This document shows positions 56,826 to 61,817 of a stretch of DNA of 64,000 bases, piece after piece (position 1 is the first letter of the stretch; each line of letters opens with the position of its first letter). The stretch comes from Zygnema circumcarinatum SAG 698-1b (Eukaryota > Plantae > Zygnematophyceae), in the NCBI GenBank assembly GCA_037447605.1, contig CM074804.1:8471909-8535908 (forward strand). Reading direction: 5' to 3'. Under the pieces are notes generated by a model. The model was given only the letters and a program-made list of their open reading frames with translations, did no database searches and was not told the DNA's origin. Made by a program: the position numbers and the translations under genes.

Positions 56826-57041
56826 GGCCGCCCACTTTGTCGCTGAACCCTGAACCCCACAGCCTCCGGCTTCCTGCCACGACAGAATCTCTCCCGCCCC
56901 TTGGCCCGAGGCCCTGAACCCTAAAACTCGGCGAAGTCTGAACCCCGAGGTTCGACCGAGCTGAAAGCCGCGCGCGCGACTCCAGCCTGAACCCTCCAAA
57001 GCGCAGGCAGACGAAAGCGAGGCGCGCGGTGCGCGGCGGCC

Positions 57042-57087
57042 ATGGTCAGTGACCTCTCGCGCCCGCGCTCCCCCCAGCCGCCCCCCT

Positions 57088-57183
<96 letters not shown>

Positions 57184-60100
57184 CCTCTCCCTCTCTCTCT
57201 CTCTCTCTCCCTCTCTCTCTCTCTCTCTCGCTCTCTTTCGCTCGCCCTCTCTCTCTCTCCCACTCCCCCACCTCCGTCGGCTTCTGCTGATACTGCTTTG
57301 TCTCGCCCTCTCCGTTCTCTTGGCTTCTTATTCTGCTTATTTCTCGGCCGTTCGTGCGTCCGCTACTTGTGCTGTTATTTCTGCCTTCATCTATGGCTGC
57401 TTCTACTTCTCCTCCTCCTCTCCCGCCCACACCTCCCAATGCTCTTATATGCTCCCCCACCTTCTACAATTCCTGCAATTGCACATCTCGTGTCTCCTGC
57501 AGCTCTTCCTCTTTCGTACCTGCTGCCGCCCTGCAGAGACTGTACATATCAGCATGTACAGGCATGCCTCTGTTGCGCTTCTATCTCCCCTTTTAGTTTC
57601 TCTTCTCTAGAAGCCATGCGCTGCTATCCGTGTGAATAAGCCTCCTCCTCCTTGACGCTGCGCGTGCAGGCCCTGTACGTGCTGTACGAGGCGGCGTCGG
57701 GGTACTCGCTGTTTGAGGCCTCTGGGCTCGACGAGATCGGGCGCAGCGCGGAGGCGGTGCAGGCTTCCGTGGCCGACCTCGAGCGCTTCGGGAAGGTGGT
57801 CAAGCTCACGGCCTTCAAGCCCTTCAGCTCCGCGGCGGATGCTCTGGAGCAGTGCAACTCCATCTCCGAAGGTGAGAGAGGGAAAGGACAGTGGAAGGAC
57901 CCCGGGGGGGGGGGGGGAGGGGGAGGGTCAGGACAATGAGAGAGGGACCAGAGATAGCATGAGGAATAGAATATGCGAGAGATTGTGACGAGCGTGGAGG
58001 TGGGATAGCGGGAGAGTAGGAGAGCGAGTGAGGAGAAGGACAGAAGGGAGTGGGAGAAATGAGGGGAGGGTGAAAGAGATAAAACAGAAGGGGGAGAGGG
58101 GAAGAATGTAAGGGAGAAGGAGAAAGTGGGCGGGGAGTGGCGCAGAGAGTTACGGGGAGAGAGATAAAGAGAGGAGCGAGGAAATGCCTTTGCGCTGCAC
58201 AATTGATTGTCGCTTCTTGAAGGCAGTAATTTTCTTGGGGTCACTGCATTTGCCGCTCTTCCGTAATGCTGAGGGTGCTTGTTGTTTGACGGCTATCAGG
58301 TTTGTTGACTCCGGAATTACAGAACTTTTTGGAGCTTAATCTCCCAAAGGTGAAGGCTGGCAAGAAGGCGAAATTCAGCTTGGGAGTTGCAGAACCAAAA
58401 TTGGGGTCTGCAATTCAGGAGACCACAAACATTCCCTGCCAGAGCAATGACTTCGTGTTGGAGTTTTTGCGCGGCATCCGCCTTCATTACAACCGCTTTC
58501 TCAAAGATCTAAAGGTATTTCAAAACTCCTGAAATTTGCAACTGGCCGTTTCTGCATTGTTTCAAGGTCTATCTCACTGTTAAGTCTTACATTTGTAGTG
58601 CAACTTTGTCTCGCTATTTTGTAGCAACTGATGGGGACTTTGGTACTAGCGTTTTTGCTCATTCCTATTTTGAATGTACTTCTTTGTGAAGTGAGAAAGG
58701 ATGTACTGCATAGAGAATTGAGCCCAATGATGAAAATCATGCTTTAACCACACTGAAGTCATGGGTCGAGTTCCTGTGTGGTACCTATGTTAAGCTACAG
58801 CTGTCAGCGAGTGGTGATTTGCAGACCCGACTGCGATGCAGCTGACAAACAGCTCATTGTTCCTCGAGCTCTGCAGTTGCTAGTCTCTGGAAGCTGTAGT
58901 GAGTTATAAAGTACCCCATGGCATCTTGGTCAGCGCTGTGGAAAACTCGGCCAAACTGAGGGCTCTGTTCACTTCGCGTTACAATCGGATCCTTTTTGTT
59001 TGTTGATGTTCTTCACCTTTGGTGTGATCACCTTTCTCGGCATTCCCTTCTCAACGATATGTAATGACGTGGTTTGGCACTCGCTGCACGAGATAAAATT
59101 CGCCTTCGTTATGTTCGGCTCTAATTCTCCTCTCTTCCTCCCCTCCCTCTCGTGTCTCGTTGTCAACTCTTTGTTTGTTTGCTCGACTTCGCATGTGGGG
59201 ATGATGAAGATGTTGAAGAACCAACCCTTCGTCTGTTCTCTTTTCACAGAAGAGATTATTTGCTTCTGTCCTGAAGCGTTGGTGGGAAGTGGAGGGGTGC
59301 AGGAGGCGGACTTACAGAGAGCGCAGTTGGGGCTGGGACATAGTTACAGCCGCTCGAAAGTGAAGTTTAATGTCAACCGAGTCGACAACATGATCATTCA
59401 GAGCATCAGTCTATTGGATACACTCGACAAAGATATCAACACCTTCTGTATGCGTGTCAGGTATCCTCTGAAAGAATCCTGCAATACCTTTTATGCTTTT
59501 TCATTGGATCACAGCATCCATGCATAACGCGGGCCAACCCGACAGCTTGAAATTGCACTCTGGGGTGCAGCTCTTGGATGCATTTCAACAGTTTCAAATT
59601 CAGCTTTGACATGTTTTTAGGTGCCTTAGATGTACTTATGCATGGAGATATACGACGAGTTGCTGAAGTCTAACTGGTTTCTCTTTAATGATGATCTGCA
59701 GAGAATGGTATTCTTGGCACTTTCCAGAGCTAGTGAAGATTGTGAATGACAATTACCTCTATGCCAAGGCAACGAACTACATCAAGGACAAGTCAAAGTT
59801 GTCAGAGTCGGCTGTGGATGAGCTCACGGAGATTTTAGGGGAGGAGGATAAAGCGAAGGAGGTTGTCGAAGCAGCGAAGGCGTCCATGGGTGGGTCCTCA
59901 CTGCTTAGTCTCGAACTTCAATACCCTGTTTTGACTTTTTTAAGACTTTTTGCTGGCTATCAAGACTTCGTGCCATAGAGATCTCAAGCAATACTGATGT
60001 ATCTTCAAGATGTTCCGGCATGAGGAAACTAGCAGTCTCACAGAGCCACCGATGTATTGTTTGGGCTGCCGTAGGGTGCAGGACAGGACATATCCGAAAT

Positions 60101-61817
60101 AGACCTTATCAACATAGAAATGTTTGCACAGCGAGTAATTGATCTTGTGGAGTATCGACGCAATTTACACTCTTACCTTGTCTCTAAAATGTCTGACGTG
60201 GCCCCAAACCTGGGAGCCCTTATTGGGGAGATGGTTGGAGCACGACTCATCGCTCATGCTGGCAGTTTGACAAATTTGGCAAAGTATCCTGCCTCAACAG
60301 TTCAGATTCTAGGAGCAGAGAAGGCACTTTTCAGGTAAAGTCTGGTTGATGGAATGTATCGCGGAGGGAGGGAGTTTTGTTTTTTCTCTTTCTGCCCTTC
60401 TCTCCGCCCCCCCCTCTCTCTCTCCCCCTCCTCCTTCCCGCCTTCCCTGTCTCTCCCTTCTCCCCCCCCCCCCCCGTCGCCCTTTCGCTACTCTTTAACT
60501 TTTTCAAGTGAAAGCCAATCTAGTTACGGAGAACTGATTGGATATAGAACTTGGGTGGGTTGGTCAGAGCGCTGAAGACCAAAGGCAATACACCAAAGTA
60601 CGGCCTAATCTTCCATTCTTCCTTCATAGGACGTGCTTCGACAAAGAATAAAGGCAGAATCTCACGTTACCTCGCCAACAAGTGCTCCATTGCCTGCCGC
60701 ATCGACTGCTTCTCTGGTTCGTTTCCGCCCATTATGTCCATCTACCACAAGAGAACTCCCATACTTCTGTATGTGCATGTCATATCCTGCTCTGATGACT
60801 TCAGCTTGTTAAAATTTAATAAAAGCTAAATCTTGATTCTTCTTCATCCCTTCTCCTGTCCCTTGGGGGCGCTTGATGGAACTGGGAGCAGAGGTGAATA
60901 CTTCTGCGTTTGGAGAAATGCTGAAGAACCAAGTGGAAGAGCGCCTGCAGTTCTATGACAAGGGCGTGGCTCCGCGTAAGAATGTGGATGCGATGAAGAC
61001 TGTCATAGACGAGTTGGCGAAACCGGCAATGGAGGCAAACTCTACTGGTGCGTTTTCTCTCACTTGCCTTCATATTGAAGGTGCCCCTCCACACCTATGG
61101 ATGCCGTTCCTGTTGCTTCGGTTACCTTCTGGATCAGTGAAGCAAATCTCACAGGCTGAAACCATCATGTAGCCTCAACATGGTATCTTTATAGATTTGA
61201 GTACTTCAGGGCAGCCCAATGATGAAATTTTGCTTTAACCACACTGAAGGAGCAGGGCAAGCCGGCACTTCCCTTGGGAGGTAGCTCTCGTCTGTCCTCT
61301 TCTTCTGTGGAAAGTATGTGGCTGCCCTGATGGTGGTGCAGCCATCCATGGCTGCCAGCTTTCAGTGCCGCCACGCGTCTCTCCGCGGGAGAGAAGGCCG
61401 GCAGAGCTGTCAGTGCGAGCGTGGTGGTGGTTTGCTCTGTGCTGTGGAAAACTCGGCCAAACTGAGGGCTGCCCTTTGTTGAGGTTTACTATTGCTCGCT
61501 CTAAGTTACTGTCCATCCTCCTCCCTCGTCCCCTCTCAGAAATGTGAGATGTGTTGTTGTTTCCATTCCTCTTTTTCCATCCTTTCCTCACAGCAGAGGA
61601 GCCAAAGAAGAAGAAAAAGAAGGCGAAAGTGGAGGAGGAAGGTGGTGAGGTCGATATGGAAGTTGCGGAGGAGCCGACAAAGAAGAAGAAGAGGGCAGCA
61701 GAGGAACTGGATGCTCCTCAGAAGAAGACGAAGAAGAAAGCGGCAGAGGCGCAGCAGAACGGGGAGGACGGGGAGGCTCCAAAGAAAAAGAAAAAAGCCA
61801 AGAAAGAGAACGACTGA
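57042..61817 (+). CDS. NOP56: Nucleolar protein 56 (box C/D snoRNP core)
   Basis: ATG-only first coding exon (ATG|GTCAGT), [90 protein letters not shown]-rich tail. Confidence 0.96.
57087..57260. repeat. (CT)n microsatellite in NOP56 intron 1
   Basis: Long imperfect CT dinucleotide run. Confidence 0.95.
58720..58965 (+). ncRNA. Long intronic box C/D RNA, copy 1 (246 nt)
   Basis: Stem GAGCCC/GGGCTC; C box ATGATGA 58727-58733; D' CTGA 58753-58756; C'-like TGTGGA; D CTGA 58956-58959; self-complementary interior. Confidence 0.85.
61208..61475 (+). ncRNA. Long intronic box C/D RNA, copy 2 (268 nt)
   Basis: 10-bp stem AGGGCAGCCC/GGGCTGCCCT; C box 61219-61225; D' 61244-61247; D 61462-61465; both guides identical to copy 1. 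Confidence 0.87.

What the first reader, a model, noticed from the sequence alone, without database searches (positions are those of the whole stretch)
58720..61475. Paralogous long box C/D RNAs in NOP56 introns whose two guides both match the D-arm of Ser/Leu tRNAs
Seen in sequence: two ~250-nt elements (58720-58965, 61208-61475) in different NOP56 introns. Each has its own terminal stem and C, D', C'-like and D boxes. The D' guide TGCTTTAACCACA and the D guide AAAACTCGGCCAAA are identical in both copies, while the ~170-200-nt interiors are unrelated in sequence yet self-complementary. That pattern points to selection on the guides and boxes. Established: eukaryotic Ser/Leu tRNAs carry a D-arm of the form UGGCCGAGUGGUUAAGGC, and as I recall plant tRNA-Ser(GCU) reads UUUGGCCGAGUGGUUAAGGCG (needs checking). 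Inference: the D guide pairs 11 bp with tRNA nt 6-16 and the D' guide pairs 12 bp (2 G-U) with nt 15-26, so one RNA could cover the whole D-arm. The D+5 rule gives G10 and G19, which are not the canonical Trm3 Gm18 site. The region contains ac4C12 (NAT10/THUMPD1), and long atypical C/D RNAs (U13, snR4, snR45) are known to guide acetylation rather than methylation. This could be an undescribed tRNA-directed modification or chaperone system hosted by a snoRNP core gene. A weaker alternative is the D guide pairing with the 18S ES6 sequence UUGGCCGGGU.
Basis: partly seen in the sequence, partly recalled or inferred. Interest (0 to 1): 0.85.

Follow-up and report, generated by a model that had tools for sequence, protein, structure and literature searches.

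The report
NOP56-intron snoRNAs matching tRNA D-arm

Summary
Elements 58720-58965 and 61208-61475 lie in two RNA-confirmed introns of a NOP56 gene. Each has a terminal stem, C box, 13-nt guide, D' box, a 180-195-nt hairpin, a degenerate C' box (UGUGGA), exactly 13 nt, a D box and the closing stem. No Rfam family matches.

I found orthologues in the last NOP56 intron of four or five other green-lineage contigs. The hosts are so diverged that third codon positions are only 34-47% identical. Even so, guide positions -1 to -10 are unchanged (D: CUCGGCCAAA; D': [U/C]UUAACCAC[A/U]), the terminal stem covaries, and the interiors are unalignable.

Together the two cores are antisense to UUUGGCCGAG|UGGUUAAG. 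A cloned Physcomitrella tRNA fragment has this string at nt 6-23. Its last 17 nt lie inside an 18-mer that sits at nt 7-24 of class II tRNAs in 113 of 116 database hits.

The +5 rule predicts Gm10 and Gm19, which are not known sites. C12 would be base-paired, so the acetylation-guide idea does not fit.

One orthologue has an unrelated D guide. This organism's tRNAs, its full rRNAs and a stable ~250-nt transcript could not be checked. A SNORD86-like role in cis remains a rival. The scan's earlier notes near this place held nothing on this family.

The parts
58720..58965 (+). snoRNA copy 1 (246 nt, terminal stem to terminal stem)
58720..58725 (+). copy 1, 5' strand of the terminal stem (GAGCCC); it pairs with 58960-58965
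58727..58733 (+). copy 1 C box AUGAUGA, one unpaired nt after the stem (K-turn spacing)
58740..58752 (+). copy 1 D' guide UGCUUUAACCACA; the core UUAACCAC is invariant in all orthologues
58753..58756 (+). copy 1 D' box CUGA
58757..58936 (+). copy 1 internal hairpin, 180 nt, closed end to end
58937..58942 (+). copy 1 degenerate C' box UGUGGA (conserved as UGUGGR); its GUGG can also pair with CCAC of the D' guide
58943..58955 (+). copy 1 D guide AAACUCGGCCAAA, 13 nt; positions -1 to -10 (CUCGGCCAAA) are invariant in the window and in L003, L004 and L006
58956..58959 (+). copy 1 D box CUGA
58960..58965 (+). copy 1, 3' strand of the terminal stem (GGGCUC)
61208..61475 (+). snoRNA copy 2 (268 nt, with a 10-bp terminal stem AGGGCAGCCC/GGGCUGCCCU)
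61219..61225 (+). copy 2 C box AUGAUGA
61231..61243 (+). copy 2 D' guide UGCUUUAACCACA
61244..61247 (+). copy 2 D' box CUGA
61248..61442 (+). copy 2 internal hairpin, 195 nt; its sequence is unrelated to that of copy 1
61443..61448 (+). copy 2 C'-like box UGUGGA
61449..61461 (+). copy 2 D guide AAACUCGGCCAAA
61462..61465 (+). copy 2 D box CUGA
58515..59302 (+). host intron of copy 1 (GT..AG, 788 nt)
   Evidence: spliced RNA contigs in 4 runs
61048..61593 (+). host intron of copy 2, the last intron; there is an alternative acceptor 3 nt downstream (61596). Contigs that retain this intron reach 4-8% of exon depth
57652..61817 (+). NOP56 host gene. This is the approximate CDS span; the first exon boundaries were not verified

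Best explanation
These are two paralogous members of a conserved, previously undescribed family of long (225-268 nt) intron-encoded box C/D snoRNAs of the streptophyte lineage. The family is hosted in the last intron of NOP56; this alga has an extra copy in an upstream intron.

Shown: canonical terminal C/D K-turn geometry with a covarying stem; an internal D' box and a degenerate C' box held together by a long rod-like hairpin; and two antisense elements whose 10 nt next to D' and D are frozen while everything else drifts.

Inferred: the selected partner of both elements is the D-arm of class II tRNAs of the tRNA-Ser type, 5'-UUUGGCCGAG|UGGUUAAG(G)-3', nt 6-23. The snoRNP would bind an unfolded or precursor tRNA. 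The 3' guide would lie on acceptor nt 6-7, U8, G9, the 5' strand of the D-stem and A14-G15. The 5' guide would lie on the D-loop and the 3' strand of the D-stem.

The geometry is that of methylation guides. It predicts fibrillarin-dependent 2'-O-methylation of G10 (D guide) and G19 (D' guide). A non-catalytic role, holding the D-arm open as a chaperone, is the fallback.
For: Anatomy and spacing. The C'-to-D spacer is exactly 13 nt in all six complete elements. Exactly one nt separates the terminal stem from the C box.

Stem covariation: C-G to U-A, A-U to U-A, and G-C/C-G/A-U at three pairs.

Orthologues in the last NOP56 intron: L003, L004, L005, L006, and L010/L011.

Host divergence: exon nucleotide identity is 72-75% and third-position identity 34-47%. 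The guide cores and boxes are nevertheless identical, and the interiors are unalignable.

The target string exists in a streptophyte: the Physcomitrella small RNA GUCAAUUUGGCCGAGUGGUUAAGGC (PMC1838911), classed as a tRNA fragment in PMC5904727. A wheat tRNA-derived fragment reads GACAGTTTGGCCGAGTGGTCT (PMC8722339).

All D' guides, and all D guides except L005's, form 10-11 contiguous bp with the moss fragment, at -14.3 to -19.3 kcal/mol. Between 0 and 29 of 3000 shuffles do as well.

The 18-mer TTGGCCGAGTGGTTAAGG lies at nt 7-24 of class II tRNAs in 113 of 116 occurrences in the viral-contig collection (Ser 88, Leu 23).

My analytic estimate is that a 10-mer and an abutting 9-mer both matching one stable RNA by chance has a probability of about 1e-7.

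Nothing else checked fits. No Rfam family matches. Arabidopsis 5S, 5.8S, U1, U2, U4, U5 and U6 lack both cores. No conserved cis target lies in the NOP56 pre-mRNA.
Against: No tRNA gene lies in the window, and the organism's own tRNAs could not be read.

Full 18S and 25S sequences of a streptophyte were not obtainable, so an rRNA target is excluded only by my memory of rRNA sequences, by one unidentified 18S 3' half, and by the Arabidopsis Nm maps.

The orthologue L005 keeps the D' guide but has an unrelated D guide, GACACAGGUCUUC.

To my knowledge, G10 and G19 are not known 2'-O-methylation sites in eukaryotic tRNAs.

The C' box is degenerate. Its GUGG can pair with CCAC of the D' guide, so part of the conservation may be structural.

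No evidence for a stable ~250-nt RNA: the runs gave only assembled contigs, and these look like intron retention.

The two duplexes overlap by 2 nt, so full simultaneous pairing is not possible.
Confidence: 0.5

Rival explanations
1. It is an ordinary methylation guide for rRNA, snRNA or pre-rRNA spacer, with a target I could not see. The best partial candidates are the 3' part of 5.8S (UGGCCGAG) and 18S. On this view the tRNA match is coincidental or reflects a tRNA-like stretch in that target.
For: Conserved 10-nt footprints next to D and D' are the classical signature of rRNA methylation guides. Arabidopsis 5.8S contains UCUGGCCGAG, which gives 8 contiguous bp with the D guide. Full 18S, 25S and spacers of this organism were never examined.
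Against: Both cores map to one contiguous 18-nt tRNA string, which is very unlikely by chance. Arabidopsis 5.8S has only Am47 and Gm79, and 18S has no Gm between 1434 and 1554. GUGGUUAA is absent from Arabidopsis 5S, 5.8S and U1-U6, and from the first 400 nt of 18S and 25S. An 18S 3' half from an unidentified eukaryote gives only interrupted duplexes of -14.5 kcal/mol or weaker. From memory I recall no 9-mer match in yeast or Arabidopsis 18S or 25S.
Confidence: 0.17
2. It is a cis-acting sensor like human SNORD86. snoRNP assembly on the element inside the NOP56 pre-mRNA would tune splicing or retention of its intron and so autoregulate NOP56. The 'guides' would serve alternative intramolecular folds rather than trans targets.
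For: The host gene is the same as for SNORD86, and the element sits in the same intron in every lineage that has it (PMC11028025). The last intron is the only one consistently present in RNA contigs at 4-8% of exon depth, as an exon-intron-exon contig. CCAC of the D' guide is complementary to GUGG of the C' box in every orthologue.
Against: A sensor needs boxes, not 10-nt frozen antisense elements. CUCGGCCAAA and UUAA have no conserved partner within the element or the pre-mRNA. There is no sequence or Rfam similarity to SNORD86. Only a NAGNAG alternative acceptor was seen, and no alternative isoform. This role could coexist with a trans function.
Confidence: 0.15
3. It is an acetylation guide for tRNA ac4C12. 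It would recruit NAT10/Kre33 to Ser/Leu tRNAs the way U13, snR4 and snR45 do for 18S rRNA.
For: The RNA is long and atypical for box C/D. Both antisense elements fall on one substrate. The region contains the CCG motif of ac4C12.
Against: In U13/snR4/snR45 the two helices flank an unpaired target cytidine (PMC5464676 and PMC9226516). Here C11, C12 and G13 pair with the guide's CGG at positions -6 to -8, and the two duplexes abut with no gap. In yeast, tRNA acetylation uses the protein adaptor Tan1 and does not depend on snR4 or snR45. L005 lacks the guide that would cover C12.
Confidence: 0.05
4. It is an evolutionary relic: an antisense class II tRNA or tRNA-derived SINE fragment captured in the intron that happened to acquire C/D boxes, so the tRNA complementarity has no present function.
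For: The two guides are collinear with an antisense tRNA interrupted by the D'-hairpin-C' insert. The antisense of a tRNA 5' end (..CCAAAUUGAC) even resembles guide plus D box (..CCAAACUGAG).
Against: A relic would not keep 10 + 9 nt identical while third codon positions of the host exon are near saturation and the interior is unalignable. The element stays at the orthologous intron and is not dispersed.
Confidence: 0.03

Closest known systems
SNORD97 / SCARNA97 (human; 2'-O-methylation of C34 of elongator tRNA-Met) and archaeal box C/D sRNAs that target tRNAs
   Same: A box C/D guide whose antisense element next to D or D' is complementary to a tRNA rather than to rRNA or snRNA.
   Different: Those act on the anticodon loop or on experimentally known Nm sites and are short (about 60-150 nt). 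Here both guides cover the D-arm, the predicted sites (G10, G19) are not known Nm positions, the RNA carries a 157-195-nt internal hairpin, and nothing has been shown experimentally.
U13 (SNORD13) / snR45 / snR4 acetylation guides
   Same: Long, atypical box C/D RNAs with two antisense elements that bind neighbouring stretches of one substrate.
   Different: Their helices leave the target C of a CCG motif unpaired, and their substrate is 18S helix 34 or 45. Here the CCG is fully paired and the substrate match is a tRNA. No Rfam match.
SNORD86 in human NOP56
   Same: A box C/D element in a NOP56 intron with no rRNA target, in a gene whose product binds that very RNA class.
   Different: No sequence similarity, and SNORD86 is reported as conserved within eutherians. 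Here the guides are strongly conserved and have a plausible trans partner. No alternative NMD isoform was seen.
U14 (Y-domain) and other box C/D RNAs with internal stems between D' and C'
   Same: An internal hairpin of variable sequence inserted between two conserved antisense domains, framed by C and D boxes and a terminal stem.
   Different: From memory, the U14 domains A and B are complementary to 18S rRNA. The guides here are unrelated, and the insert is much longer.

Membership tests
Box C/D snoRNA | C box (RUGAUGA) near the 5' end and D box (CUGA) near the 3' end | tested here: met
   AUGAUGA (ACGAUGA in L004) and CUGA in all six complete elements
Box C/D snoRNA | Terminal stem bringing C and D together, with K-turn spacing | tested here: met
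   Stems of 5-10 bp, one unpaired nt before the C box, D box directly on the stem, and compensatory changes at three pairs
Box C/D snoRNA | Internal D' and C' boxes | tested here: inconclusive
   D' CUGA is invariant. C' is UGUGGR, matching 4 of 6 positions of UGAUGA and lacking the A of the first GA. It is conserved and always exactly 13 nt from D, but it could instead be a strand pairing with CCAC
Box C/D snoRNA | Antisense element of at least 10 nt immediately upstream of D or D', conserved across species | tested here: met
   Positions -1 to -10 are invariant for D in four elements. For D', positions -2 to -9 are invariant in all, and -10 is U or C
Box C/D snoRNA | Stable RNA bound by fibrillarin, NOP56, NOP58 and SNU13 | not testable with these tools
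   Only assembled contigs were available. They cover the host introns at 0.3-8% of exon depth, which does not show a processed 250-nt RNA
tRNA-directed box C/D guides | Contiguous Watson-Crick complementarity of at least 10 bp to a tRNA, ending next to the D or D' box | tested here: met
   10-11 bp with the Physcomitrella tRNA 5' fragment for 11 of 12 guides. The organism's own tRNA was not available
tRNA-directed box C/D guides | A 2'-O-methyl group at the nucleotide paired to guide position 5 | not testable with these tools
   The predicted sites are G10 and G19. From my own knowledge, neither is a known Nm site in eukaryotic tRNA (Gm18 is)
U13/snR4/snR45 acetylation guides | Two antisense elements flanking an unpaired target cytidine in 5'-CCG-3' | tested here: not met
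   C11, C12 and G13 pair with guide positions -8 to -6. The duplexes overlap by 2 nt with no gap. The family's geometry is described in PMC5464676 and PMC9226516
U13/snR4/snR45 acetylation guides | Complementarity to 18S helix 34 or 45 | tested here: not met
   In an 18S 3' half containing h34 and h45, the best duplexes are interrupted and no stronger than -14.5 kcal/mol. No snoU13 Rfam hit
SNORD86-type cis sensor | A snoRNA-dependent alternative splice isoform of NOP56 | tested here: inconclusive
   Only a NAGNAG acceptor and intron-retaining contigs of the last intron at 4-8% of exon depth were seen
SNORD86-type cis sensor | Homology to SNORD86 | tested here: not met
   No Rfam match, even at E up to 10

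The most novel reading that the evidence does not exclude
Streptophytes possess an RNA-guided snoRNP system aimed at the D-arm of class II (Ser/Leu-type) tRNAs. A long box C/D RNA hosted by the snoRNP core gene NOP56 opens the D-arm of pre-tRNA. It then either installs undescribed ribose methylations (Gm10, Gm19) or acts as a folding or quality-control chaperone. This would couple snoRNP supply to the maturation of a tRNA subset.
Probability: 0.38. Interest if true: 0.85.

Novelty: new variant of a known kind. Interest (0 to 1): 0.68.

Why it matters
RNA-guided tRNA modification is routine in archaea. In eukaryotes the example I know of is the human SNORD97/SCARNA97-type guidance of tRNA-Met C34, and I found none reported for plants. 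A guide family frozen across very deep streptophyte divergence and aimed at the tRNA D-arm would add a new substrate region and possibly new modifications. It would also give a concrete, testable job to a class of 'orphan' long C/D RNAs. Its fixed home in NOP56 further suggests that snoRNP core genes recruited regulatory or functional snoRNAs independently in plants and animals. Mosses with gene targeting appear to carry it, so the question can be tested directly.

Tried and rejected
1. Rfam at gathering and at permissive thresholds on the window and on the orthologue loci found no family.

2. ARAGORN found no tRNA genes in the window or in loci L001-L005.

3. Getting real rRNA failed in several ways. 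The Arabidopsis reference table in PMC8053127 stores only the first 400 nt of 18S and 25S. The rRNA archive of PMC5122169 lies beyond the 200 searchable supplementary files, and a control string was absent. A viral-contig scan for 18S gave only a chimeric partial 18S, L020. The LSU scan found nothing. Searching with a spurious ORF from the rDNA in order to fetch rDNA contigs found nothing.

4. No cis target lies in the NOP56 pre-mRNA of any species.

5. The acetylation-guide geometry is rejected because C12 is paired.

6. The 18S stretch CUGGUUAAUUCC next to helix 34 gives only 7 bp, and the invariant C at guide position -2 would be mismatched, so I rejected it.

7. The L005 D guide against the 25S GAAGACCC region (recalled from memory) gives 7 bp plus a bulge and points to no known site. 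I did not pursue it.

8. NOP56 loci of other green-lineage contigs (L007-L009, L012-L019, L137-L142) have short last introns and no copy. L136 ends before that intron and is uninformative.

9. Plant snoRNA papers gave no family with these guides and no plant tRNA-directed snoRNA.


Full report
OBSERVATION.

Copy 1 (58720-58965) is laid out as follows:
- stem GAGCCC, then one unpaired A
- C box AUGAUGA
- a 19-nt spacer ending in UGCUUUAACCACA
- D' box CUGA
- a 180-nt interior
- UGUGGA
- AAACUCGGCCAAA
- D box CUGA
- stem GGGCUC

Copy 2 (61208-61475) has the same modules, a 10-bp terminal stem and a 195-nt interior.

The pairwise alignment shows the two ends identical apart from a few bases between the C box and the guide. 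The interiors align no better than unrelated sequence. Both whole elements fold into a terminal stem plus a long hairpin, with z = -5.0 and -5.2 against dinucleotide shuffles.

HOST GENE AND EXPRESSION. Logan contigs of four RNA runs of the same organism are spliced exactly around both elements. The introns are 58515-59302 and 61048-61593, the latter with an alternative acceptor at 61596; four further introns are also spliced out. The most conserved exon matches NOP56 better than NOP58: human NOP56 scores 1.5e-37 and NOP58 scores 4.4e-26. Close exon ORFs in the protein collection are named nucleolar protein 56.

Contig depth over the last intron is 4-8% of exon depth in all four runs, as one exon-intron-exon contig. 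The intron holding copy 1 is at 0.3-3.4%. Two other introns are at zero in all runs. This shows that the introns are transcribed and that the last one is noticeably retained. It does not show a processed 250-nt RNA, because contig depth is flat and the library types are not on record.

NOT A DESCRIBED FAMILY. Rfam 15 gives nothing at gathering thresholds on the whole window. At E up to 10 it gives only noise on the region, and the same holds for the orthologues.

ORTHOLOGUES. I used NOP56 exon ORFs as protein queries and fetched the encoding contigs. I also ran one metagenome scan with the 3' module.

The same element sits in the last NOP56 intron, just before the lysine-rich tail exon, in these loci:
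- L003, L004 and L006, which have AT-rich, moss-like introns
- L005, which is GC-rich
- L010/L011, where the contig ends at the D' box, so only the 5' module is seen

Other green-lineage NOP56 loci with short last introns lack the element (L007-L009, L012-L019, L137-L142). L136 ends before that intron. Only the window has a second copy in an upstream intron.

The hosts are deeply diverged. The exon is 72-75% identical at the nucleotide level, and third codon positions are 34-47% identical.

WHAT IS CONSERVED.
- Exactly one nt lies between the terminal stem and the C box, and the D box abuts the stem. This is K-turn geometry.
- The terminal stem changes by compensatory substitutions: C-G to U-A, A-U to U-A, and G-C/C-G/A-U.
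- D' is always CUGA.
- The C'-like box is always UGUGGR, and it is always exactly 13 nt from D.
- The interiors are 157-195 nt and are always closed end to end into a rod (z = -1.4 to -6.2).
- Within the moss-like trio, the stem next to D'/C' shows compensatory changes.
- The D guide reads AAA/AUU/AAU + CUCGGCCAAA, so positions -1 to -10 are invariant and -11 and -12 vary.
- The D' guide reads UGCUUUAACCACA in the window, UUCCUUAACCACA in L005, and (U/G)AUGCUUAACCACU in the moss-like group. So -2 to -9 are invariant, -10 is U or C, and -1 is A or U.

Ten frozen nucleotides next to each box is the footprint expected of methylation-type guides.

TARGET. The two cores are antisense to UUUGGCCGAG and GUGGUUAAG, which abut as UUUGGCCGAG|UGGUUAAG. 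Three lines of literature and database evidence bear on this string.
- A Physcomitrella cloned small RNA is GUCAAUUUGGCCGAGUGGUUAAGGC (PMC1838911). It was later classed as a tRNA fragment (PMC5904727).
- A wheat tRNA-derived fragment reads GACAGTTTGGCCGAGTGGTCT (PMC8722339).
- In the viral-contig collection, the 18-mer TTGGCCGAGTGGTTAAGG lies at nt 7-24 of an ARAGORN-called class II tRNA in 113 of 116 occurrences (Ser 88, Leu 23).

Against the moss fragment, every D' guide and every D guide except L005's forms 10-11 contiguous base pairs. The energies are -14.3 to -19.3 kcal/mol, against about -6.5 +/- 2 for shuffled guides, and 0-29 of 3000 shuffles do as well.

The U/C difference at D' position -10 lies opposite a G, so it gives U-G or C-G. 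This is the kind of change a G in the target tolerates.

The conserved footprints stop at the GAG|UGG junction, with a 2-nt overlap in both lineages.

My analytic estimate is that a 10-mer and an abutting 9-mer both matching about 10 kb of stable RNA by chance has a probability of roughly 1e-7.

The organism's own tRNAs could not be read: none is in the window. That it has such a tRNA is an inference from how widespread this D-arm is.

WHAT THE GEOMETRY PREDICTS. The nucleotide paired to guide position 5 is G10 for the D guide and G19 for the D' guide. G19 is the second G of the invariant GG, since position 17 is absent. From my own knowledge these are not known Nm sites, whereas Gm18 is.

C11-C12-G13 is paired to the guide's CGG. 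This is the opposite of the U13/snR4/snR45 arrangement, in which the target C stays unpaired between two helices (PMC5464676 and PMC9226516). In yeast, tRNA ac4C12 depends on the protein Tan1 and not on snR4 or snR45. I therefore reject the acetylation reading.

A continuous target strand passing from the D-guide duplex to the D'-guide duplex is topologically reasonable, because its crossing point lies at the C'/D' motif. This is inference only.

ALTERNATIVES FOR THE TARGET.
- Arabidopsis 5S, 5.8S, U1, U2, U4, U5 and U6 are printed in full in the PMC8053127 supplement. They lack GUGGUUAA and UUGGCCG. 5.8S has UCUGGCCGAG, an 8-bp match.
- Arabidopsis 5.8S carries only Am47 and Gm79, and 18S has no Gm between 1434 and 1554.
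- One 18S 3' half from an unidentified eukaryote gives only interrupted, weaker duplexes.
- Full 18S and 25S of a streptophyte could not be obtained. An rRNA or spacer target is therefore not formally excluded. From memory I know of no 9-mer match.
- No conserved complement exists in the NOP56 pre-mRNAs.

COMPLICATIONS.
- L005 keeps the D' guide, but its D guide (GACACAGGUCUUC) has no tRNA match. Dual coverage of the D-arm is therefore not universal, and the D' guide looks like the older constraint.
- CCAC of the D' guide is complementary to GUGG of the C' box in all orthologues, and the two pair in one centroid fold. Part of that conservation could be structural.
- Human SNORD86 shows that a C/D element in a NOP56 intron can act purely in cis as a sensor of core-protein supply (PMC11028025). 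The retained last intron fits that idea, but frozen guides do not. The two roles are not exclusive.

VERDICT. This is a real, conserved and undescribed long box C/D snoRNA family. I am about 90% confident of that much. The best reading of its guides is class II tRNA D-arm recognition, at about 50%. The outcome of that recognition is open: methylation of G10 and G19, or chaperoning. I found no report of a plant-lineage tRNA-directed snoRNA in the papers searched. Earlier notes of this scan mention other intronic snoRNAs in this genome, including one in fibrillarin, but nothing on this family near this place.

Noticed in passing
window 61590-61597: The last NOP56 intron has a NAGNAG acceptor (CAGCAG). 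Different RNA runs assemble either the 61593 or the 61596 junction, which adds or removes one codon at the start of the lysine-rich tail exon.
   Followed up: partly
window 59500-59600 (intron 59458-59698): There is a hairpin with a 7-bp lower stem (GCAUCCA/UGGAUGC) followed by AUUUCA-ACA-GUU. It looks like a single H/ACA-type hairpin. This intron also appears in RNA contigs at low depth in 3 of 4 runs.
   Followed up: no
window 59995-60066 (intron 59889-60081): A box C/D-like candidate with a perfect 6-bp terminal stem (CAAUAC/GUAUUG) and a C-like box UGAUGU. It has only CGAU where a D box should be, and no RNA contig covers it.
   Followed up: no
L005 12311-12556: The orthologue in a GC-rich relative keeps the D' guide but carries a different D guide (GACACAGGUCUUC) whose target I could not identify. 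It resembles the complement of the 25S GAAGACCCUGU region (recalled from memory) with one base missing.
   Followed up: partly
L004 1-30: The contig starts with GGCTCAGTGGTTAAACACC, a tRNA- or SINE-like A-box stretch that also contains GTGGTTAA. tRNA-derived repeats are therefore another class of RNA carrying the D' guide complement.
   Followed up: no
window 57000-58180 and 60390-60470: Long GA/CT-rich low-complexity tracts flank and interrupt the NOP56 locus. The reads tool skipped a repeat at 60397-60440.
   Followed up: no
L020 1880-4543: An IMG/VR 'viral' contig joins a 655-aa ORF, which I guessed without checking to be RNA-virus polymerase-like, directly to a partial eukaryotic 18S rRNA. 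It is probably a chimeric assembly.
   Followed up: no
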